From the NCBI RefSeq assembly GCF_001194135.2, contig NC_068983.1:165580932-165642669 (forward strand): a stretch of DNA of 61,738 nt, given 5' to 3'. How positions within the stretch are numbered: the stretch's first letter is position 1; each line of letters begins with the position of its first letter. Shown one piece after another: positions 14,375-48,556 of this stretch. The position numbers and the translations under genes are program-made. Source of the stretch: Octopus bimaculoides. Taxonomy: Eukaryota. Under the pieces are notes generated by a model. That model was not told the DNA's origin, did no database searches, and saw nothing but the letters and a program-made list of their open reading frames with translations.

Positions 14375-15334
14375 CTCCTCCTCCTCCTCTCTCTCTCTTT
14401 TTTCTGGATCAAAACCCAAATGTCACGGTTCTACTGCTGTAATCGTGAAGTTTGTTGCTGTCTAGCTTTAGATCAGACTTCGGCAAGTTCTAAACTTAGT
14501 ACATTGACAGCTGGAACTAAATACCACAGACGTTATCTAAGCAATAATAATAATAATAATGATAATAATAATAATAATAATAATAATGTTTTTTCTTCTG
14601 TTCCAGGACTGAACGGTTACAATTATCCTGACCAACATGCTTTAGCTCTCGATTATCGAATCGTCGGTTTCCGCGAATGTGCCACGGAAGTGGCACGTTA
14701 TTTGGTGACGGTCGAAGGAATGGACATACAAGAACCATTACGATTACGTCTGCTGAGTCACTTGCAATGCTACTGCGCCCAACGAGAAGCGGCGGCGGCC
14801 ACGAAAACGCCACACTGGTCTTCAGTGAGCACGCACCCCACCATCAACAATCAATACAACGGTTCCAATCACATGACCTCTGTACCGAATATGATTGGTA
14901 CAGCGTCAACACAACACACAGGGCAAAATGAACACCATTTGTCGACGATCAGTACAAGCCATTCAGGACTTTCAGTGGCGACGAGTGCTGTCCCCCCTTC
15001 ATACAGCGAAGCCAGGGTCAGCCAACAGACAGAAATATCAACGCCTTCATCGAGTGCGTTGCACAGTCATATGCGACTCGCGACCACAGCGCCTGCCGTG
15101 GCATCTGCTTCTCACCAGATGGCAGCATCTTTGAATACGCCCACTCAGATGCAACAAATATCACCGTCCATGCTTCCAACCATGCCTCAGATCAGTCAGT
15201 TCCCAGTTTCCTTAAATTCCTCCATGATGTCTCCAAACAATCACACGTACGGCAGTGGAAACGGAGTTGGGATCAACCAACACGGACCTTCAGTAAAGCC
15301 ATACCGACCGTGGGGTACAGAATTGGCTTATTGA
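6577..15334 (+). CDS. Hey: Hey (hairy/E(spl)-related with YRPW motif), whole gene: join(6577..6638,10618..10666,13741..13824,14108..14180,14607..15334), 996 nt, 331 aa
   Basis: Exon lengths 62+49+84+73+728 sum to a multiple of 3 and all introns are GT-AG. The protein has the basic-[56 protein letters not shown], the Orange domain [17 protein letters not shown], and C-terminal [10 protein letters not shown]. The Gly in the basic region and the YRPW are diagnostic of Hey rather than Hes. Confidence 0.96.
7046..7308. mobile_element. hAT-type MITE in Hey intron 1
   Basis: TIRs CAGTGATTCTTAACC and GGTTGAGACACACTG; perfect 8-bp TSD CTCTAAAC at 7038-7045 and 7309-7316. Confidence 0.85.
9882..10142. 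mobile_element. hAT-type MITE with similar TIRs in Hey intron 1
   Basis: TIRs CAGTGGTCCTCAACC and GGTTGAGAATCACTG; TSD GTCTAAAC / GTCTAAAT (7 of 8 match). Confidence 0.82.
10618..10666 (+). CDS. Hey: Hey exon 2 ([16 protein letters not shown])
   Basis: Acceptor attgcag| after a (TTA)n tract and donor GGG|GTAAGT. It ends in the RKKRRG start of the basic region. Confidence 0.93.
13741..13824 (+). CDS. Hey: Hey exon 3 ([28 protein letters not shown]), basic region and helix 1
   Basis: tttgcag| acceptor and CAG|GTCAGT donor; 84 nt; near-invariant Hey sequence. Confidence 0.97.
14108..14180 (+). CDS. Hey: Hey exon 4 ([24 protein letters not shown]), loop and helix 2
   Basis: tcttcag| acceptor and AAG|GTACGC donor, phase 1. 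Confidence 0.96.
14213..14400. repeat. (CT)n-rich tract in Hey intron 4
   Basis: Read directly. Confidence 0.95.
14607..15334 (+). CDS. Hey: Hey exon 5: Orange domain, Ser/Thr/His-rich linker, [10 protein letters not shown]-stop
   Basis: ttttcttctgttccag| acceptor; open frame to TGA at 15332-15334. Confidence 0.95.
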
Positions 15335-15366
15335 CTATAAGATAACAATAATGGTCTTTCTTTCCT

Positions 15367-15416
<50 letters not shown>

Positions 15417-16513
15417 ATAGAAAGCAAAGAAGGTGGTTATGAAACAAGAGTTTGACTGTTAAAGACATTGCAATGTTTAGTTCTTATTTCTCTGTTCATG
15501 TTTTCGAGTCCTGCCATAGTCGACTTCAAGATTACCCCTTTCGGGGTCTTGTATAGGTATATATAAATATCCCAACTAATCTACTGGAGTCGATTGAACT
15601 GAAAATATCCCAACTTTTTTTATTCAAAAAAATTGGCCTTGAGCTTAAGTAAAAAAGCAATATTTCCCACTCCCTCACTTTTTCTTTTCTTTTTTTTTTT
15701 TGTTAACCAAAATAACTACGACGCCATATATTTCAAAATGTAACTGCCATGCTATATACAAGGAGCAACAAAAGATCTTCCATATTCTACACAGCCTACT
15801 GATGAAGTTAGGCAGGGGGTAACGATGTTTCCATGTAGATAATTTTTTTTTCTTACCATTCAAGGCGGTGCCTCAATATGTCCACAGTCTAATGTCTAAG
15901 TAAAACGTAAAACAAAACATTAGACTTGAATTGGTGTTCGCCGTATGGTTGTTGTTGATGTGTTTATCAAGAAGGGTGAATCTGGAAGGTTCTTTTCGTT
16001 GCACCTTGCATATGTATGTATGTATGTATGTATGTATATGTTATGGCAGTCACATTGAACTAAATTTTGTTGACCAAAGTTCCGTCGGTCTGACAGCAAA
16101 ATGCAATCCTAAATAACATATCATAATAGAAACCAGCAAACAAGCAATTCCACGTGTTTCTCTGTTTGCCCAGTTTAAAAAGATCTCCTCTTTCTAAAAT
16201 CACCATTTACGTTCCACCTGGTTCTTCCTGTCTGTGTGTAAATAATTTAAATTCATCTTGAAAAAAAAAAAAGGACGATTCATTCAGTTTTGGAGAATGT
16301 TTGTTTTTCTTTATATATATATATTCGTTTGTTTTTGTCTTTCCAAAACAAATCTGTGTACAATATTATAAAGATGATTCCACAATATAACTGTTTCATA
16401 TATTTTTAAATATTATTATAAAGAGTGATTTCTTTCTTTTGTTTGTTAAACAATAAGTTAGCAAAAACGAAAACGAACTTCCAATTTTCTTTCTGGTTCA
16501 TCACTTTGTAACA

Positions 16514-16564
<51 letters not shown>

Positions 16565-16645
16565 CTCTCTCTCTCTCTCTCTCTCTCTCGCTCTTTCATT
16601 TTATTTTATTTTTTCCTCTTCCTTTGTCCTTACACCTAGGGACAC

Positions 16646-16651
16646 AATAAA
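16646..16651 (+). terminator. Candidate proximal poly(A) signal of Hey
   Basis: AATAAA followed by a T/GT-rich tract (tttttttgttgctcttttc), 1.3 kb after the stop codon. Confidence 0.4.
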
Positions 16652-16665
16652 TTTTTTTGTTGCTC

Positions 16666-16737
16666 TTTTCTACACATCACTATAAACATTCCAAGACAGC
16701 ATTTTCTACACATCGCTATAAACATTCCAAGACACAC
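16666..16737 (+). repeat. 36-bp tandem duplication in the putative Hey 3' UTR
   Basis: ttttctacacatcactataaacattccaagacagca followed by ttttctacacatcgctataaacattccaagacacac. Confidence 0.9.
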
Positions 16738-17389
16738 GTATATATATAAGAGACAGAGAATGTGTGTGTGTGTCATAGACAAGAATGGAGAATTCTACAT
16801 CTTCGAAATTTATTTATTGCAGTATTATTTTCATTAGATTCCAATCCGACACGTGTTTCTGCTGTATAAGTCGTCTTAATGTCCTTTGATGTAGCATTTA
16901 TGAGCATTTAGTTGATTCAGTGTATTCATAGTGGTTGTGGTACCTTCGTAAGAAAATCCAATTCTTTGCGCTGCTTTTGATGATAAGTTTACAAGAATGA
17001 GTGGAAAGAGGGGAAGGCTAAGTGATCACGTGGTATAACAGTAGAATCGAAACATTCCTTTTACGTGTGTTTTTTTTTAATAATTTATATATACATATAT
17101 ATTTTTATGAAATTTCAGCTTTTATATACAGATACAAATGTGTAAACTCACACAATTCAGAAATCTAGGATCATCGTTGTTATAACGTCCTTTTTTTTTT
17201 TTCCTTGCTTGCATGGTTCAGACGGAGCTTATTAAGGCAAATATTCTGCAATTGTATGCGTTTACTGTCGCCAACCTTCCTCTGTTTCCGAGCAACGTAA
17301 TGCCCCGACATGTTTATGCAGAATATTGCAAATGAACGACACTGCTTGTATAGCATTCATCGACATTCCATAAATTATGTTTCCTTCAC

Positions 17390-17395
17390 AATAAA
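17390..17395 (+). terminator. Candidate distal poly(A) signal of Hey
   Basis: AATAAA with GT-rich sequence downstream (gtgtgtatat). Confidence 0.35.
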
Positions 17396-18644
17396 AATAA
17401 CACACACACACACACACATGCATGTGTGTATATATATATACATACATACATACATATAAATATATATATTTACATATATATGTATATGTATATATTTATA
17501 TTGTGTGTGTATATTTACTCTTTCACTTGTTTGAGTCATTTTGACTGCGGCCATGCTAGAGCACTTCCTTTAGTCGTGCAAATCGACCCCAGGACTTATT
17601 CTTTGTAAGCCAAGTATTTATTCTATCGGTCTCTTTTGCCGAACAGCTAGATACGGGGACGTAAACACACCAGCATCGGTTGTTTTGCCTCATATTTTTA
17701 TTCATCATCTTTCTACGAATTTTCTATGAAGTATACGGTGTTTACAGATCCCCTGTTACTTATATTTCAAAATTGGCATTTATCATCATCACCACCATCA
17801 TCATCATCATCTCTATTTTGGGCTTTTAGTTATATCTTTGATATCTTAAACAATGGCTTCCGATGCAGACTTTTTTCTTCCGTAATTATTTTCTTTTCAT
17901 ACAAATATATTTAACAAAAATTTCCAACGAAATCTATTTTACGGCTTCCAACATACGTACATATATATATANNNNNNNNNNNNNNNNNNNNNNNNNNNNN
18001 NNNNNNNNNNNNNNNNNNNNNNNNNNNNNNNNNNNNNNNNNNNNNNNNNNNNNNNNNNNNNNNNNNNNNNNNNNNNNNNNNNNNNNNNNNNNNNNNNNNN
18101 NNNNNNNNNNNNNNNNNNNNNNNNNNNNNNNNNNNNNNNNNNNNNNNNNNNNNNNNNNNNNNNNNNNNNNNNNNNNNNNNNNNNNNNNNNNNNNNNNNNN
18201 NNNNNNNNNCAAAACTTCCGGATACGATTTATTAAACCCTTATTCCACCTTCAAATAAGGTTCAAATCGAAACTCTTCTCTCCTCCTGTCTCGTAGCTTC
18301 CACTGAATTTTCTTCTTTTTTTTTCTTTTTTCTTTTTTTCTTTTTTTTTTTTTTTACCCATCTTCCAAACACACTCTATTCAAACGATGCTTTCTAGCTA
18401 GTTTTTCTACGATCACAACATTCGATATAACGGCACTAACCAGAGTCTTGGTCGTTATAGGTCGGTGTTATGCCTTCAACGGCAAACTCGCGTCTAAATT
18501 CACTTAAATCTCAAAAGCTGGTCGTGTGTGCGCGTGTAAATGGCAATAGATATGTCTCTATCGATTTATATCTATTATTTAAAATCTTTGTATCCTGTTT
18601 AAGCATCGAGTAAAGATATCACCTCTTCAGAAGACAAACTGTTA

Positions 18645-41300: not shown

Positions 41301-44300
41301 TCCCTGTATATGGCTTGTACAGCGCTCACTAACCATTCTTCTATCCCTAGTTTCCTCATTGACCACCAGATAAGGGAACGGGGGACCCTGTCAAAGGCTT
41401 TCTCCATGTCAACGAAAGCCAGGTACAGAGGTTTATCTTTGGCTAGATATTTCTCCTGCAGCTGTCTTACCGGAAATATAGCATCAGTGGTGCTTATCCC
41501 TGGCACAAACCCAAACTGCATCTCGTCTAGACTGACTCTCTCCCTAATTAGTTGGGCTATGACCCTCTCCGTAACTTTCATTACCTGATCCAACAACATG
41601 ATATCTCTGTAATTATTTGTATCTAATGCATCACCTTTACCCTTGTAACAGTTGACTATGGGGGTGTTACACCAGTCATTGGGTATGACTCCTTCATGTA
41701 TCACCTGATTGACTATATGGGTGAATAGACTATAACTGACACACCAGATATTTTAAGCATCTCTGCTATGATCCATGATGGGCCAGGGTGGGTGGCTTTT
41801 CCCTTCTGCTGCTTGTAAATAGTTAATTTCTGTTATTCTTGATTTTCTTCTGGAGTAGAAAAGTAATAATTCAATGTAAAATATGAACCAGGGAAGGAAC
41901 ATTTGAATCCAGTTAAAGTTAAGTTTTGTGTATTGCAGGGATTTAGGAAAAGCCCCACCAACACCCCCCACCCTTCTTCATCTGTATGAATCTAAAATAA
42001 AACAAAGTGAAGGATCAAATCTAATTAACTCTTGTGATAACAACACACCCAAGACTGTCCTGGTTTATCACAATCGTCATTGTTTAACATCCATTTTCCA
42101 TGCTGGCATGGGTTGGACAGTTTGACAGGAGTTGGCCAGCCAGAAAGCTACCCAAACTCCAGTTATCAGTTCTATGATTTTAACTGCCAAACACCCACTT
42201 AATGATGAAAATTAATTAAATGAAATGAATTTCATGTATTTCAACAGAAATATGATACCGAAAGGGTTTAAAAAGTATTGTGTATTGTTGTTTCTTTTTA
42301 CTGTTATATGTAGATTTAAGTTTTGATGTCTTTATTTCTCTGTGCTACATGTTAGGATAGTTCTGCTGCTCTGCAAAACCTTTTTAAATATTTCGACATG
42401 GCAGAATAATTCCACTACACAACAGCATCCTTTTAAGTCTATGTGGTAAAATAATATTTCTGCTGCACAGCACTATTTTGTTGAATATTTTGTCCGGTTT
42501 GTCTTAGCTCTAAATGGTTCATGCTCGTTTACAGCCATCACATGATGTCAAGACAAGATTACACAATCATTTATACATCTAAATTTATAAATATATGTAC
42601 ATACACACACACGACAGGTTTCTTCCAATTTCTGTCTTGCAAATCCACTTACAAGGCTTCTGTTGAACCAGAGCCACAATAGAAGATACTTGCCTAAGGT
42701 GCCATGCAGTGGGACTGAACCCAAGACCACATGGTTGGGAGCCGTGCTGCTTAACCGTACAGCCACACCCGGTCTGTCTAAAATTGATGAATCTGGGTAA
42801 CATTTGAAGAAATTTCTGTTCAGTTTATTATTTCTCAAAAAATTGTGATTTCTGTAATTAGTGTGAAAAAAAAAAACTACGCTTGTGTAGAAAATGTCTT
42901 TAAAATTGGAAAGAGGTAGTTTGAACCAAAAAGAACCCTAATCCTGATTAGATGGAATGGCCAGATCTGGAACGCCTTTGATCATAGATTCCCTTAATCA
43001 GGGCTGATCTGGGACTTAAACAATAACAACAACTATCCATTAATCACTTTGTTGTTTTAATTAATTTTTCTGCTCACATCATTGTTCTTTGTTTGTTTTC
43101 AGGTGTATTAAGCTGTCACTGGTCCATGACTTAGCAGAGAGCATTGTGGGGGATCTTGCTCCCTCTGACAATGTTAGCAAACCAGAGAAACGGCGTCGAG
43201 AAGAAGTAGGTGCATTCACTTTCTGTTTTGTCGTCTATCTTTTACTTATTTGACTGTGGCCATGCTGGGGCACTGCTTTAGTCAAACAAATCAATCCTCT
43301 GGAATTATTTTTTTTCTTTAAGGTTGGTACCTATTCTGTCAGTCTCTCTTGCTGAGCCGTTAAGTCACGGGTACATAAGCAAACCAGTCCTGGTCATCGA
43401 GCAGTGGTGGGAGACACATACACAAAAACACGTACACACACATACATATGTATACAACGGGCTTCTTTCAGTTTCCATCTACCAAATCCACTCACAAGGC
43501 CTTAGTAGGAGAGACTAATCCAAGGTGCCATGTCGTGAGACTGAACCCGGAATGTTACCTCACAGCCATGCCTTGTTATATTTGTAGAATATACAGAGAA
43601 ATGGGTTGCAGAGTTAAAACATTGTACAAAATAATTTGCAGTATTTGGGTAACATCCTGTTATGTTTCTACATAAAGTCCTTTCGTCCCCATGTGTTTAA
43701 CAATATGCTTAGTTACGTTATTTACATTTGACAGATAGTTGTCCTCATCTTGTTTGTTGTTAACACAATGTTTCAGCTGATATACTCTCCAGGGTCAGGG
43801 CTAAATGGATGCCCAGAAGACGGATGAGAACCCAGGTTTGAAATTTCCCCAAGACACCTGATGAAGGCTGGAGGGTATATCAGCCGAAACGTGTTAACAA
43901 CAAAACAAGATGAGGACAAATATCCGTCAAATGTAAATAATATACATAATTCCTCATCTCTTAAATATAGAGCTGTAAAATGCTTAGTTTAAGTGCTGGA
44001 ATTGATATACTCAGCAATGCTGCTCCCTTAGAATGTATCACCTTTGTTAGAATGCATTGTTGTTGTTGTTATGGTGATGAGCTGGCAAAATTCTAAGCAG
44101 CATTTCATCCGTCTTTACATTCTGAATTCAAATTCCAATGAGGTCAACCTATTTTATTGATCCCAAACAGATGAAAAGCTAAGTACCAGTTGTACGCTGA
44201 GGTTGATGTAAACTTAACCCATTCTGCGAAATCGTTGGCCTTGTGCCAGCAATTTGAAACCCGTGTGATAGAAAGTAATTTGGATTATCTTTTTAATCTG

Positions 44301-47300
44301 TTAATCTCAATGTTATTGTTTGAAATTATTCTCAGTACCAGTATCTTTTGTCTTTCATTTATATGTTTCTCTATTTGCAGACTGCCATGAATCTGATCAA
44401 AGATATGGTTGGTGGTGCTGTGGGACAAGAATTTTTCCAGCTTTGGCAGGTTTGTAATTTCATATTTGCCTTTCATACTTTTAGGATCAATATAAATAGG
44501 TACTACTCAAATACTGGAGCCAATGCAATTAGCTAAACCTCCCCTCCCCCCTCTCTCTCTAAAATTCCTGACCCCGCACCATAATTTGTAACCATTAGTA
44601 GTAGTAGTAGGAGGAGGATAGCAGAATTGTGGAAGCAGCAATATACTAAAGGAGGGTAATTAGCCCCATTCTTCTACATCCTGAGTGAAAATCCTGCTTT
44701 AGCTACCTTTACCATTGATCTGCGGTTGGTTGAATAAATACCAGTCAATTTTACAGGAACATCTCTGTATCTTGTTTGAGTGAATCCTTTAAAACTAAGT
44801 GTAAGTGCTATCATCATTTTATGTCTTCTTTGTTCCATGCTGGCATGGGTTGGATGGATTGACAGGCTCTGATGAGTCCAAAGACTGCATCTTGCTTCAA
44901 TAGTTGCTCTGGTATGGTGCCTATAGCTTGATGCCCTCTCTAATGCCAACCATTTTGTAGCATAGATTGGCAGCTTTCTTCTTCCATGGTACCAGCACGA
45001 GTGAAGTTGCCAGGGCCATGCAGCCTGCAAGACTAAGATCTCTTTGGACTGAATAGGGCTCCAGGAGTGACAAAAGCAGCTTTATGCTAGAGAAGGGATC
45101 AGAATAGAACTAATTTCTTGCTGTTGAGGTGCTACATGTCTGCTTATAGAAGCGAGGGTGTCAGAGTGGACCCACAAGATATGAAGTGAGTGGGGACAGC
45201 AGAACAGGGAAGTGTGTAGAGAGAGAGAGGTTAGAAATGCTCACCTCTTGGCTGATAAAACCATAATTTATTCAGTCACAAGCTGTATCATCTTTGGTCT
45301 CTTGTTTCCAGTTGAACTGAGTTTCCTTTGTTTTCGATGTCTCTTTATATAGGAGTATGAAAATGTATCAAGCAAAGAGGCTGAATATGTTAAAGATCTG
45401 GACAAATTTGAAATGGTCCTGCAAGCTTATGAATATGAACAACTTGATCGAAAACCAAAATCTCTTCAAGACTTTTTTGATAGCACTAAAGGTAAGGACA
45501 AAAAACTCTTTTCCTTCTGTCCACTTGTGTTAATACTCATCATAACCTAGTCTTGGGATACGTATCTTTGCTTTCTTGATCGAAGCAAGAGTTAAACATT
45601 ATCACTTCACCTTTCATAATCAGAGAGTAACCATTTGACATCAATGCTCAAACAGATCAGCTGGAGTTTACTGAGGAAGATTTTCTACAAGTTGACCCCT
45701 TTTCTGTTGCCAGCCCTTGTTTCCAATCAAGGTAATATTTCCTTGTGGAATTACATGTTTTCCACAGAGAACTGGGAATGAGCAACATTACTTGTATGCT
45801 GATGTGGTGCTTCTGTACAACCATGACATGATGCGAAGACAAGGCTGTGCATGAACACACAGTCAGCCCAATGCTATAGAAGACACTTGCCCAGGATGCC
45901 ATGCAGTGGGAGTGAACCCTAGACCACATGGTTGGGAAGCAAGCTTCTTAACCACACAGTCACATCCGCTAACCTTTCCTGAGTGGATCAGGAATTTATT
46001 TCGTTTTTGGATTTGGTTTGCAAGATTCTTTATGTGAGTTCATATGTTGAAGCATATTCTGTTGTGTCTGGAGAGAGTCCTTCTCTTTTGGTGCCTTATC
46101 ATTTAACACACTCACCAGTAAAGTTTCCACCCATGTATTTTTCTAAAATTTTTGTTGCATCTTGCAACCTTTTCAATAGATGTTGAATCTGTCCGTTATT
46201 GAAGCTGCATTCTTTTTGATTGTTTGTGCGCATGTGTGTGTGCATACACATGTAAGTATGCATGCATGTGTGTGTGCATATATGTATGTGTGTACGTATG
46301 TATGCTGCTTGCATATTCATGTTTGTGTGTGCGTATGTGTGCTTATCTATCCATCTGTATGTCTATCTGTTTACATTCATATCCATATGCCTACATACAT
46401 GTGCATATTCACATGTACACACTCACATCTATCTACATAACAGCCCACAAACTATTCTACACTACTTGTGGGTATGGTGGTATGATATCTACTATTTATA
46501 TTTCCTATTCAGTACTGGGGATATTTCATTTATGAGGACATACTCCCGTATTTGTCTGAGTGCTGGGTCTTTTGGGTGCTTGGATAAAATGCGGATGTCA
46601 AGTTGACCCAAGTTGCCTCCATGTTGGTCCTTGGCATGTTGGTAGAGTATGGAGGACTGTTTTTTGTCGTCATATTGTCTCAGATGTTCATTTAGTCATT
46701 CCGCAATGCTCCTAGATGTCTCCCTTATGTATGTCATGTTCATGTCTTTACAAGCACCTTCTATGCATCTTATGCTGTAAACTATATTTCTAGTTAATGC
46801 CATGCAGTTATCGTTGATGCATATGGTATTCTCAAAGGGGTAAGTCCTGCATAGTTGTGATCTGACAGTTCCCTGGCTTTTCAACAATCTGAATATTGAG
46901 TTTGGTCCCCACCACGTGTTCACCTTGTTTGCTTTGTCACAAGTTCTTTGCATCCTATTCCATTCTTTGTTTCTATATCTAGGGCAGGTACCACTGGTCT
47001 CATTACATATAATGTTATCTAATTTCTTTCTAGCCCCACCCCTCTCCCCTGTATACTCGAACCCTGTCTTTCTGATCATATCCAGAGAACTGCATGTGGT
47101 GCATGAAGTTCTGTACATGTTTCATAGGGTTCGCATAGTGGGGACACGTTATTCATTATCCTAACTAGGTCTGCTATCAGTATGTTGGTTTTCATGTTGC
47201 GTGACAAAGCTGAATTTTTGTGAACAACATATTTTGAATCTATGGGTTTCATGTAATAGGAGTGGAGGAGCTGCACTCTGTTGTTCAGAGTCTCTAACCA

Positions 47301-48556
47301 AAGTGCAGTGTCAAGGACGAGAAGTCTATTGTTGAGATGCCTACTGGGGTAATCTACAGTTACCTTGATACTTTGGTGGATGGAGTTAGCTACATACTGG
47401 ATGCTCCTCTCAGTTTCTACATTACCGTTACTAGAATTGGTCTTAACTATGATATTAATGTCATCTGCATACCTACAATAGAATAGAAGAGTTGTGGACT
47501 GTTCCGCTAAGGATTGCTTAAGTTTTCTGTCCCACCAGGTTATGAAGAGGCCAGCCACATCTCCAGCTACACCAATGGCTGCAACTTGAACCTGCATGTA
47601 TAGTTTCTTGTTAAACTTTACTATGTGGTTCTTACGCTAGCCCCTATTGCATGTACAATCATTCCTTTCACCTGATTGTTGTTCTCAGGGTCTTGGTGGG
47701 GCAGAATCTACTGAGATCATGGTCGTCTAAATACTCACTCGTAGCTTAGTCTAAGGAGGAGGCCCAGTTCCCTCATGTTGACCTCGCACAACTCTACTTC
47801 ACTCTTACAAATTATCTCAATGCAATTTCTCCACAGCAAAATCCATACACACACACAAGGAGACAGAGAAACACAAACACAGCCACACAAACTTGAATAT
47901 GCAGGCAGAATACATACACACAAACAAACAAAAAGAATGCAGCTTCACTAACAGATAGTCAACAACTATTGAATAGGTTGCCATACAACGAAAAATTTTA
48001 GAAAAATGCATGGGTGGAAATTTTACCAGTGATTGTGTTAAATCATAAGGCACTAAAAGAGAATGACCCTCCCCAGACACAACAGGAATTTATTCTTACA
48101 GCTAATTGTACTATTCACTCTAGATTTGAACTTGTGACAAAGTAGATCACTATTCTATGCACCTCACCATTTTGTTTCTCTACCTGTGCATTCTTTTCTC
48201 AAATAACTTTAGCAACCATGCTAACCTTTTTGATTGATGTTTGACCTTTTTTTTTTGTCAACCATATTTTGGCTGAAATGCATTGCCTTTGTTTCAATTA
48301 ATTTTGGAAATAGTGAAATAACTTTGTCATTGATCTGGTATTTGGTGCATAAACTTGGAATTTTGGTGGAAGGTTTTAATTTAGATCACTTTAAAACAAG
48401 GCATTTGTATGTTTGTATCATGGAACCAGGGTCAATCCCAGGTCAATATTAAAAGAATTAAAAATATATTTTGTTTATAATCTTGCAGGTCACTTCACAA
48501 CTAAACAGGTTCAAAAGTGGATGAGTGAGCTGGAAAAAATCCGAGAGAACTCCTAG
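32900..48556 (+). CDS. HDDC2: HD domain-containing protein 2 (5'-deoxynucleotidase family): join(32900..32962,38403..38527,43103..43205,44381..44449,45353..45491,48489..48556), 567 nt, 188 aa
   Basis: All GT-AG and in frame. Motifs: LVGQLK|R.RRTGW..NV..PESVSDHMYRMAV, LVHDLAESIVGDLAP, EYE...S.EA.YVKDLDKFEMVLQAYEYE. Confidence 0.95.
34345..37566 (+). mobile_element. RTE-clade LINE, near full-length ORF (APE endonuclease and RT), disrupted; in HDDC2 intron 1
   Basis: Endonuclease motifs GVGGIGILL, IISAYAPQ, VAGDFSGHV, IDYIL. RT motifs NYRGIKLL, QFGFVPGKSTTDAIF, AFVDMEKAFDRVP. There is a frameshift near 34940, a stop at 35187-35189, an N gap at 36171-36707, and a (GAT)n-like 3' tail. Confidence 0.93.
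38403..38527 (+). CDS. HDDC2: HDDC2 exon 2 (RIRRTGW...ESVSDHMYRMAV...), 125 nt
   Basis: ttcccag| acceptor and AG|GTAAAT donor. Confidence 0.95.
40103..41772 (-). mobile_element. 5'-truncated RTE LINE of the same family; in HDDC2 intron 2, antisense
   Basis: ORF 41027..41704 contains QFGFVPG, DMEKAFDRVPR and ELLYADDLAL. It is colinear with 35775-37340 and ends in the (GAT)n tail near 40103. Confidence 0.93.
43103..43205 (+). CDS. HDDC2: HDDC2 exon 3 (CIKLSLVHDLAESIVGDLAP...), contains the HD dyad
   Basis: ttttcag| acceptor and GAA|GTAGGT donor; not in the ORF track. Confidence 0.95.
43715..43979 (+). mobile_element. Small insertion with inverted arms, a hammerhead-like core and a 10-bp target-site duplication (Penelope pLTR-like)
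   Basis: Arms 43718-43792 and 43868-43940 are reverse complements with few mismatches. ATGCTTAGTT occurs at 43705-43714 and 43980-43989. CTGATGA..GAAAC lies at 43858-43890. Confidence 0.65.
44381..44449 (+). CDS. HDDC2: HDDC2 exon 4 (TAMNLIKDMVGGAVGQEFFQLWQ)
   Basis: tttgcag| acceptor and CAG|GTTTGT donor; 69 nt. Confidence 0.92.
45353..45491 (+). CDS. HDDC2: HDDC2 exon 5 (EYENVSSKEAEYVKDLDKFEMVLQAYEYE...)
   Basis: tatatag| acceptor and G|GTAAGG donor; 139 nt. Confidence 0.94.
45990..48090. repeat. Inverted pair of a roughly 200-bp repeat (45990-46230 and 47915-48090) flanking the Penelope remnant
   Basis: ctgttgtgtctggagagagtccttctcttttggtgccttatcatttaacacactcaccagtaaagtttccacccatg and its reverse complement are both present. 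Confidence 0.8.
46490..47600 (-). mobile_element. Penelope-like element remnant (RT plus GIY-YIG endonuclease) in HDDC2 intron 5
   Basis: RT-like AIGVAGDVAGLFITWWD..CRYADDI..LLVLD..YMKP. Endonuclease NIVYSIRC..TYIRETSRSIAE*LNEHL..ILYQHAKDQH..RQIREYVLI..LNRK. Frameshifts and stops are present. Confidence 0.85.
48489..48556 (+). CDS. HDDC2: HDDC2 exon 6 (GHFTTKQVQKWMSELEKIRENS-stop)
   Basis: cttgcag| acceptor, phase 1, TAG at 48554-48556. Confidence 0.88.

What the first reader, a model, noticed from the sequence alone, without database searches (positions are those of the whole stretch)
16646..17395. Four miR-1 seed matches lie between two poly(A) signals of Hey: a possible 3' UTR on/off switch
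Seen: ACATTCCA (miR-1 8mer) at 16686-16693, 16722-16729 and 17363-17370, and ACATTCC (7mer-m8) at 17052-17058. All lie after AATAAA at 16646 and before AATAAA at 17390, and two arose from a 36-bp tandem duplication. A rough composition estimate gives well under 0.1 expected hits in this 750 bp, and I noticed the motif only a couple of times elsewhere on this strand. Established: miR-1 is a conserved bilaterian muscle miRNA tied to Notch-pathway control, and as I recall mouse Hey2/Hrt2 rises when miR-1-2 is lost. Inference: proximal versus distal polyadenylation would make Hey mRNA immune or highly sensitive to miR-1, for example in muscle or heart versus neurons.
Basis: partly seen in the sequence, partly recalled or inferred. 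Interest (0 to 1): 0.72.

Follow-up and report, generated by a model that had tools for sequence, protein, structure and literature searches.

The report
miR-1 seed matches in octopus Hey UTR
Downstream of the octopus Notch-target gene Hey there is a real cluster of sequences matching the muscle microRNA miR-1; it probably makes the long Hey mRNA sensitive to miR-1, but it is seen only in the genus Octopus and the proposed poly(A) on/off switch is not conserved.

Summary
In this Octopus bimaculoides window, ACATTCCA lies at 16686, 16722 and 17363 and ACATTCC at 17052. All four are on the sense strand, 1.35-2.03 kb after the Hey stop codon (15334), between AATAAA at 16646 and 17390. Sites 1 and 2 come from a 36-bp tandem duplication.

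With the duplication collapsed, three sites in about 2 kb has P about 5e-4. After correcting for the number of miRNA families this becomes about 0.03-0.08. ACATTCC is the second most over-represented 7-mer in the UTR, and no other of 47 conserved miRNA seeds has more than 2 sites.

Three sites and the distal AATAAA are shared with O. vulgaris. That species is too close to prove constraint (P 0.17 with a global baseline, 0.03 with local baselines). The proximal AATAAA and the duplication are absent from O. vulgaris. Argonauta, another coleoid, Haliotis, Mytilus and Aplysia show no such cluster.

Best reading: a genus-restricted miR-1 response module in a long Hey 3' UTR. The switch is at most specific to O. 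bimaculoides. Rivals are chance, and a DNA-level element, since the motif is also the TEAD M-CAT site and CACGTG E-boxes are equally enriched. No transcript-end data could be reached. This is a new member of a known kind, of modest interest.

The parts
14606..15334 (+). Last coding exon of Hey (aa 90-331, ...[10 protein letters not shown]) with stop codon TGA at 15332-15334
   Evidence: tblastn of XP_014767679.1 gives 100% identity over 242 aa. ORF listing. Pfam HLH plus Hairy_orange precomputed for the protein.
15335..16645 (+). Proximal part of the presumed 3' UTR. It has no miR-1 seed match and no AATAAA or ATTAAA.
   Evidence: It aligns to O. vulgaris at about 90% identity, apart from a roughly 400-bp insertion in O. 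vulgaris.
16646..16651 (+). Proximal AATAAA with a U-rich downstream stretch. It is specific to O. bimaculoides.
   Evidence: It is not conserved in O. vulgaris, where the aligned bases are '----AA'. Downstream sequence TTTTTTTGTTGCTCTTTTCT.
16666..16734 (+). 36-bp tandem duplication (1.9 copies) that carries sites 1 and 2
   Evidence: TRF: period 36, 96% matches. O. vulgaris has a single copy.
16686..16693 (+). miR-1 8mer site 1 (ACATTCCA), conserved in O. vulgaris (L001 22477)
   Evidence: Predicted accessibility is at the 93rd percentile of the UTR. Only 32% of neighbouring 8-mers are conserved.
16722..16729 (+). miR-1 8mer site 2 (ACATTCCA), in the duplicated copy. It is absent from O. vulgaris and lies 36 nt from site 1.
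   Evidence: Accessibility at the 95th percentile.
17052..17058 (+). miR-1 7mer-m8 site 3 (ACATTCC followed by T, which is also an exact M-CAT CATTCCT). Conserved in O. vulgaris (L001 22895). It sits in the best conserved block, 25 nt after a CACGTG.
   Evidence: Accessibility at the 40th percentile.
17363..17370 (+). miR-1 8mer site 4 (ACATTCCA), conserved in O. vulgaris (L001 23193). It ends 19 nt before the distal AATAAA and is an island in a poorly conserved stretch.
   Evidence: Only 15% of neighbouring 8-mers are conserved. Accessibility at the 69th percentile.
17390..17395 (+). Distal AATAAA, conserved in O. vulgaris and followed by a CA/TG-rich stretch. This is the presumed end of the long UTR isoform.
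   Evidence: It is the only AATAAA or ATTAAA within 3 kb of the O. vulgaris stop codon.

Best explanation
The four motifs are canonical seed matches for octopus miR-1. They lie in the distal 700 nt of a long (about 2.06 kb) Hey 3' UTR that ends at the conserved AATAAA at 17390. Three of them date back at least to the common ancestor of O. bimaculoides and O. vulgaris. The fourth was added in the O. bimaculoides lineage by a 36-bp duplication, which placed two highly accessible 8mers 36 nt apart.

When the long mRNA is present in cells rich in miR-1 (muscle, suckers, heart), AGO-miR-1 should bind these sites and lower Hey output. This would be a fail-safe that keeps a Notch effector low in differentiated muscle, in line with miR-1 repressing Delta, Dll1 and Notch3 in other animals.

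The module is restricted to the genus Octopus and is not an ancient miR-1-Hey link. The proximal AATAAA is new in O. bimaculoides or lost in O. vulgaris, so an isoform switch is at most a species-specific addition.

Shown: the motifs, their enrichment, their sense-strand orientation, their retention in O. vulgaris, and the octopus miR-1 seed. Inferred: that the region is transcribed as UTR, that Hey and miR-1 are co-expressed, and that repression occurs.
For: - Exact 8mer and 7mer-m8 matches to the octopus miR-1 response element ACATTCCA listed in Zolotarov 2022 Data S3.
- Local enrichment: 3 independent sites against 0.15 expected, P = 4.5e-4. ACATTCC is the second most over-represented 7-mer in the UTR.
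- miR-1 is the only one of 47 conserved seeds with more than 2 sites, and 40 seeds have none.
- All sites are on the sense strand. In the 30.7-kb O. vulgaris locus the only three ACATTCC on either strand are these three.
- Sites 1 and 4 are intact inside stretches where only 32% and 15% of neighbouring 8-mers survive.
- The distal AATAAA is conserved and is the first canonical signal after the stop in O. vulgaris.
- Another coleoid's Hey transcript contigs carry at least 1 kb of UTR without AATAAA, so long Hey UTRs are plausible.
- Flanks are 65-73% AU, and sites 1 and 2 have high predicted accessibility.
- miR-1 is enriched in octopus suckers and heart.
- The miR-1/206 family represses Notch-pathway genes elsewhere, and HEYL is listed among miR-206 targets.
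Against: - No transcript or 3'-end evidence could be obtained. The median octopus 3' UTR is only 350-380 nt.
- After look-elsewhere correction the enrichment is only about 0.03-0.08.
- O. vulgaris is too close to be informative: 55% of all 7-mers are conserved, and sequence beyond the distal AATAAA is conserved about as well.
- There is no cluster in Argonauta, another coleoid, Haliotis, Mytilus or Aplysia.
- There is no 3' supplementary pairing beyond what shuffled flanks give.
- The same motif is a TEAD site, and CACGTG is equally enriched.
- HEY was not found in the stored part of the published list of conserved octopus 8-mer sites, although that file is truncated.
Confidence: 0.45

Rival explanations
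1. Chance plus shared ancestry. Three unrelated ACATTCC arose neutrally in AT-rich, indel-prone sequence downstream of Hey. They persist in two closely related species only because there has been too little time to lose them, and one was copied by a neutral 36-bp slippage duplication. They have no selected function, and the region may not even be in the mature mRNA.
For: - Window-wide counts match expectation: 10 observed against 9.5 expected.
- About ten 7-mers recur three or more times in this UTR, so a coincidence with one of 48-138 seeds has a probability of 0.03-0.08.
- The global conservation baseline gives P = 0.17 for 3 of 3 sites retained.
- Sequence downstream of the distal AATAAA is as conserved as the UTR.
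- No cluster appears in any species outside the genus.
- CACGTG shows the same nominal enrichment, which shows how easily a 'meaningful' motif turns up.
Against: - miR-1 is the single outlier among 47 conserved seeds.
- All sites are on the sense strand, with zero elsewhere on either strand of the 30.7-kb O. vulgaris locus.
- Sites 1 and 4 survive in locally fast-evolving sequence. The local baseline gives P about 0.03.
- From general knowledge of miRNA targeting: even non-conserved 8mers usually repress when miRNA and mRNA are co-expressed.
Confidence: 0.33
2. DNA-level cis-regulatory module. The motifs are TEAD/Scalloped M-CAT sites (CATTCC[T/A]). Together with three CACGTG E-boxes (the Hey/Hes/Myc/USF class) they would form an enhancer or auto-regulatory silencer downstream of the Hey coding sequence. 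On this reading the match to miR-1 is incidental.
For: - All four sites contain CATTCC followed by A or T, and site 3 is an exact CATTCCT M-CAT (PMC7547805).
- Octopus has one TEAD gene (Zolotarov table S2).
- CACGTG occurs 3 times in the UTR against 0.15-0.26 expected (P 5e-4 to 2.5e-3), twice as CACGTGTTTCT. All three are conserved in O. vulgaris, where they are 3 of only 4 in 30.7 kb.
- One CACGTG lies 25 nt from site 3, inside the best conserved block at 98% identity.
Against: - Transcription-factor sites have no strand preference, yet all three independent sites are on the sense strand. This happens 1 in 8 times by chance, or 1 in 4 if only agreement among the sites is required.
- All four sites also carry the 5' A that miR-1 pairing needs but TEAD does not strictly need.
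- No comparable cluster lies downstream of Hey in Argonauta or other molluscs.
- The same look-elsewhere caveat applies.
- No chromatin data are available.
Confidence: 0.12
3. A regulated choice between the proximal (16646) and distal (17390) poly(A) sites makes Hey mRNA either immune or highly sensitive to miR-1 in different tissues, as a selected on/off switch.
For: - In O. bimaculoides the geometry is exact. Cleavage 10-30 nt after 16651 would fall just before site 1 (16686), so all four sites lie in the extension.
- Both hexamers have U-rich or GU/CA-rich downstream sequence and share the context CACAATAAA.
- Tandem alternative polyadenylation is common in octopus: 4,800 genes (Zolotarov supplement).
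Against: - The proximal AATAAA is absent from O. vulgaris, where no other AATAAA or ATTAAA precedes the distal one.
- No 3'-end data are available.
- In octopus the longest UTRs are used in neural tissue, where miR-1 is low. The long isoform and the miRNA may therefore rarely meet.
Confidence: 0.1

Closest known systems
miR-1/206 repression of Notch-pathway mRNAs: Drosophila Delta (Kwon et al. 2005), mouse Dll1, vertebrate NOTCH3, and HEYL as a listed miR-206 target
   Same: The seed family is the same (site ACATTCC[A]). The logic is the same: a muscle miRNA dampens Notch signalling components through 3' UTR seed sites.
   Different: Here the candidate target is the effector Hey itself, in a mollusc. 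The sites are shared only within the genus Octopus. No experiment supports repression. A review reports no direct miRNA-Hey1/2 interaction in the heart.
Conserved octopus miRNA response elements catalogued by Zolotarov et al. [quoted passage not shown]
   Same: The definition is the same: an 8-mer ending in A, aligned between the same two species. Sites 1 and 4 meet it.
   Different: HEY is not in the stored part of their Data S3, but that file is truncated, so this remains undecided. Their test is genome-wide and statistical and does not establish function for an individual site.
Tandem 3' UTR alternative polyadenylation that removes miRNA sites (UTR shortening or lengthening, as described in mammals and Drosophila)
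   Same: There are two AATAAA in one terminal exon, and all seed matches are confined to the extension.
   Different: The proximal signal is not conserved even in the sister species studied. Isoform usage is unknown.
TEAD/Scalloped M-CAT site clusters (5'-CATTCCT-3' / GGAATG)
   Same: The core motif is identical in all four sites. Clustering with E-boxes is typical of muscle and Hippo-responsive enhancers (general knowledge).
   Different: All sites have the same orientation and lie inside a presumed transcript. No binding or chromatin data are available.

Membership tests
Canonical animal miRNA target site (miR-1 family) | Contiguous Watson-Crick match to miRNA nucleotides 2-8, with or without A opposite nucleotide 1 | tested here: met
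   There are three 8mers (ACATTCCA) and one 7mer-m8. The octopus miR-1 response element is given as ACATTCCA in Zolotarov 2022 Data S3.
Canonical animal miRNA target site (miR-1 family) | The site lies within the 3' UTR of the mature mRNA, upstream of a poly(A) site that is actually used | not testable with these tools
   No transcript contigs cover this UTR. The support is indirect only: a conserved distal AATAAA, no earlier canonical signal in O. vulgaris, and at least 1 kb of UTR in another coleoid.
Canonical animal miRNA target site (miR-1 family) | Preferential evolutionary conservation of the seed match | tested here: inconclusive
   All 3 independent sites are kept in O. vulgaris. P is 0.17 against the global baseline and 0.03 against local baselines. 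No cluster occurs in Argonauta, another coleoid, Haliotis, Mytilus or Aplysia.
Canonical animal miRNA target site (miR-1 family) | miRNA and target are co-expressed, and repression depends on the seed | not testable with these tools
   miR-1 is enriched in suckers and central heart. Hey expression in octopus tissues was not available, and there are no reporter or CLIP data.
Tandem alternative-polyadenylation switch of miRNA sensitivity | Two poly(A) signals in the terminal exon, with the regulatory sites only in the extension | tested here: met
   This holds in O. bimaculoides only. AATAAA is at 16646 and 17390, and all four sites lie between them.
Tandem alternative-polyadenylation switch of miRNA sensitivity | The proximal signal is conserved in related species | tested here: not met
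   O. vulgaris has GGGACAC----AATTTTT and has no AATAAA or ATTAAA before +2531.
Tandem alternative-polyadenylation switch of miRNA sensitivity | Both sites are used, with tissue-dependent ratios | not testable with these tools
   No 3'-end data can be reached.
TEAD/Scalloped M-CAT binding-site cluster | Core 5'-CATTCC[T/A]-3' (GGAATG on the other strand) | tested here: met
   All four sites contain it. The motif definition comes from PMC7547805.
TEAD/Scalloped M-CAT binding-site cluster | TEAD occupancy, open chromatin, or enhancer activity | not testable with these tools
   No chromatin data are available. Having all sites on the sense strand argues weakly against this reading.

The most novel reading that the evidence does not exclude
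In the O. bimaculoides lineage two small mutations occurred within 90 bp: a 4-bp indel that created AATAAA at 16646, and a 36-bp duplication that doubled an accessible miR-1 8mer. Together they would have converted a constitutively miR-1-sensitive Hey 3' UTR into a species-specific isoform switch. This would be a very recent birth of post-transcriptional control on a Notch effector. A second possibility is that the same 1.2-kb stretch is read twice, as DNA by TEAD and bHLH factors (M-CAT plus CACGTG) and as RNA by miR-1.
Probability: 0.08. Interest if true: 0.55.

Novelty: new member of a known kind. Interest (0 to 1): 0.3.

Why it matters
If the sites work, octopus would add Hey to the list of Notch-pathway genes restrained by the muscle miRNA miR-1. 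That would be a case of the same regulatory logic (miR-1 against Notch signalling) being rebuilt on a different gene of the pathway in a lineage-restricted way. It would not be an inherited ancient site. That is useful for understanding how miRNA-target networks turn over in cephalopods, whose miRNA repertoire and 3' UTRs have expanded. It does not change what is known about how miRNAs or alternative polyadenylation work, and the evidence is still only sequence-based.

Tried and rejected
- Transcript evidence. The exact Hey proteins of O. bimaculoides and O. vulgaris are found only on genome assemblies, not on Logan RNA contigs. Exact look-up of ten spurious ORFs from the UTR found nothing. 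A homology search with a 500-aa concatenation of UTR ORF translations also found nothing. So neither UTR transcripts nor additional octopod genomic contigs could be retrieved.
- More distant cephalopods. The ten Logan contigs of the 81%-identical Hey turned out to be one unidentified coleoid species, with UTRs 99.4-100% identical. All break at about +1,000 nt inside a repeat, so they say nothing about sequence beyond 1 kb. I did not identify the species.
- Deep conservation. Haliotis, Mytilus and Aplysia gave no sites within 2.5 kb. The Lingula look-up failed.
- Published list of conserved octopus 8-mer sites. HEY is not in the stored part of Zolotarov Data S3, but the file is truncated, so this is not evidence of absence. 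The miR-1 row of Data S2 was not retrievable.
- 3' supplementary pairing. Duplex energies are no better than those of shuffled flanks.
- Base-composition skew as a marker of where the transcript ends was uninformative.
- Depletion of sense-strand AATAAA in the UTR is explained by T-rich composition and was dropped.
- The Rfam scan of the whole window gave no hits, so there is no miRNA gene or other known RNA here.

Full report
**What is there**

The window is Octopus bimaculoides. It is 100% identical to chromosome CM046603.1 of GCA_001194135.2. The annotated protein XP_014767679.1, 'hairy/enhancer-of-split related with YRPW motif protein 1' (bHLH plus Orange domains), maps to five exons at 6577-6639, 10619-10669, about 13741-13830, about 14100-14182 and 14606-15331. 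A TGA stop follows at 15332-15334.

On the sense strand downstream of the stop:
- ACATTCCA lies at 16686, 16722 and 17363, and ACATTCC (followed by T) lies at 17052.
- The only + strand AATAAA before 19016 are at 16646 and 17390. There is no ATTAAA in between.
- TRF reports a 36-bp tandem duplication at 16666-16734 (1.9 copies, 96% matches) that carries sites 1 and 2.

Every coordinate in the finding is correct.

**Is it more than chance?**

The window as a whole is not enriched: 10 matches on both strands against 9.5 expected. Only the local cluster is unusual.
- Base composition predicts 0.044 sites in the 750-nt segment and 0.15 in the 2,060-nt stretch from the stop to the distal AATAAA.
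- Counting the duplication as one event leaves three independent sites. A first-order Markov simulation of the collapsed UTR gives P(>=3) = 4.5e-4.
- The look-elsewhere effect matters. Ten 7-mers recur three or more times, well separated, in this UTR. ACATTCC is the second most over-represented of them, at P = 5.1e-4.
- With 138 miRNA families in octopus, 48 of them ancient, the chance that one such 7-mer coincides with a seed match is roughly 0.03-0.08.
- As an empirical control I counted 7mer-m8 matches for 47 conserved miRNA families. Ten of the seeds were checked against Zolotarov's Data S3, and the rest are from memory. miR-1 has 4 sites, miR-71 has 2, five others have 1, and 40 have none.

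The cluster is unlikely to be pure chance, but the evidence is not overwhelming.

**Comparison with other species**

- O. vulgaris (L001). Its 30.7-kb locus contains exactly three ACATTCC on either strand. All three lie downstream of the Hey stop and are orthologous to window sites 16686, 17052 and 17363. The duplicated copy (16722) is absent, so the duplication belongs to the O. bimaculoides lineage. The distal AATAAA is conserved. The proximal AATAAA is not, because four of its bases fall in an indel (GGGACAC----AATTTTT). In O. vulgaris the distal signal is the only AATAAA or ATTAAA within 3 kb of the stop.
- How informative O. vulgaris is. The two species are close (about 50 My). About 55% of all 7-mers in the UTR are perfectly conserved, and sequence beyond the distal AATAAA is conserved about as well at 52%. 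Retention of 3 of 3 sites therefore has P about 0.17. With local baselines the picture is more suggestive. Only 32% of 8-mers around site 1 are conserved, 64% of 7-mers around site 3, and 15% of 8-mers around site 4, which gives P about 0.03. That test is post hoc.
- Outside the genus there is no cluster. Argonauta hians (two 92-97% identical loci) has one 7mer-m8 at +511/+520 in a UTR that no longer aligns, and its next site is at +4.5 kb.
- Ten Logan RNA contigs of an 81%-identical Hey all come from one unidentified coleoid. They have no site and no AATAAA in the roughly 1 kb of UTR they cover.
- Haliotis, Mytilus and Aplysia have none within 2.5 kb.

**Mechanism**

Octopus miR-1 has the canonical response element ACATTCCA and is most abundant in suckers and central heart (Zolotarov et al. 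2022, tables and Data S3).
- The sites are plain seed sites. Predicted duplexes show no 3' supplementary pairing beyond what shuffled flanks give.
- Flanks are 65-73% AU.
- Predicted accessibility is high for sites 1 and 2 (93rd-95th percentile of the UTR), moderate for site 4 and average for site 3.
- Sites 1 and 2 are 36 nt apart. From general knowledge of miRNA targeting, that is at the edge of the spacing associated with cooperative action.
- Site 4 ends 19 nt before the distal AATAAA, near the end of the presumed UTR, which is a favourable position.

If the long transcript exists and meets miR-1, three 8mers plus a 7mer should give clear repression. That would fit the known antagonism between miR-1/206 and Notch signalling: fly Delta, mouse Dll1, NOTCH3, HEYL listed among miR-206 targets, and Hey2 raised in miR-1-2 knockout hearts. 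No direct miRNA-Hey1/2 interaction had been reported in the heart as of a 2022 review.

**The switch**

Cleavage after 16651 would fall just before site 1. But the proximal signal is missing from O. vulgaris, so a switch cannot be a conserved feature. In O. vulgaris the predicted UTR carries all three sites constitutively.

Octopus also uses its longest UTRs in neural tissue, where miR-1 is low. That fits a fail-safe role better than an on/off switch.

I could not obtain any transcript-end evidence. The median octopus UTR is only 350-380 nt, so whether Hey mRNA reaches 17390 remains an inference. It rests on the conserved distal signal, the lack of earlier canonical signals, and a UTR of at least 1 kb in another coleoid.

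**Rivals**

- Neutral chance plus recent common ancestry remains a serious alternative.
- A DNA-level reading is also open. ACATTCC[A/T] contains the TEAD M-CAT element CATTCCT/GGAATG, and octopus has one TEAD gene.
- I noticed that CACGTG E-boxes are as enriched as the miR-1 seed. There are three in the UTR against 0.15-0.26 expected, two of them as CACGTGTTTCT. All three are conserved in O. vulgaris, and one lies 25 nt from site 3 in the best conserved block.
- The sense-strand orientation of all sites argues weakly for the RNA reading.

**Verdict**

The most likely reading, at about 45%, is a genus-restricted miR-1 response module in a long Hey 3' UTR. The alternative-polyadenylation switch is at most specific to O. 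bimaculoides, at about 10%. This would be a new member of a well-known kind of regulation and is of modest interest. Mapping existing 3'-end data and aligning a handful of further octopod genomes would settle it.

Noticed in passing
window 16151-16156, 16850-16855, 17027-17032: Three CACGTG E-boxes (the Hey/Hes/Myc/USF class) lie inside the presumed Hey 3' UTR, the first two as CACGTGTTTCT. Expected 0.15-0.26, P 5e-4 to 2.5e-3. All three are conserved in O. vulgaris, where they are 3 of only 4 CACGTG in 30.7 kb. This could be an auto-regulatory DNA element, or just a calibration of the look-elsewhere effect.
   Followed up: partly
window 26147-26224 (-) and 29664-30083 (-); L012 14484-15375 (-); L013 16117-16945 (-): A convergent mitochondrial ribosomal protein gene (Pfam MRP-S35, E = 1.2e-21) lies downstream of Hey in octopus. 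The same neighbour in the same orientation follows Hey in Mytilus and Aplysia, so this is conserved microsynteny. From memory, human HEY1 and MRPS28 are also neighbours.
   Followed up: partly
window 15354-15360 and 16337-16343: Two seed matches for miR-71 (GTCTTTC; seed recalled from memory) lie in the proximal UTR. Both are conserved in O. vulgaris. It is the only other conserved miRNA family with more than one site here.
   Followed up: no
L001 21405-21807 (O. vulgaris), corresponding to window ~16010: O. vulgaris carries an insertion of about 400 bp flanked by microsatellites in the Hey UTR that O. bimaculoides lacks. It lengthens the distance from the stop to the miR-1 sites by about 440 nt.
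   Followed up: no
window ~17510-17690: A SINE-like repeat lies immediately after the distal AATAAA. It is shared with O. vulgaris at the same position, and other copies occur elsewhere in both loci (for example L001 3773-3942 and L006 28423-28594).
   Followed up: no
window 16643-16651 and 17387-17395: Both AATAAA hexamers sit in the same 9-mer, CACAATAAA. ACAATAA is the most over-represented 7-mer in the UTR, with 4 copies at P = 2.7e-4.
   Followed up: no
window 34382-36727 (+), 41027-41704 (-), 46696-47597 (-): There are retrotransposon remnants. Two ORFs match Pfam RVT_1 reverse transcriptase (E = 3.7e-10 and 1.8e-16). The others gave no Pfam hit.
   Followed up: partly
L004 and L005 (Argonauta hians, two contigs): The identical Hey protein is encoded on two large contigs whose downstream sequences are 92-97% identical. 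These are either diverged haplotypes or a recent segmental duplication in that assembly.
   Followed up: no
L007 730-1176, L008 520-966, L009 336-782: The unidentified coleoid's Hey transcript contigs carry a called 148-aa ORF in the 5' leader upstream of the Hey start. It has no Pfam hit on record.
   Followed up: no
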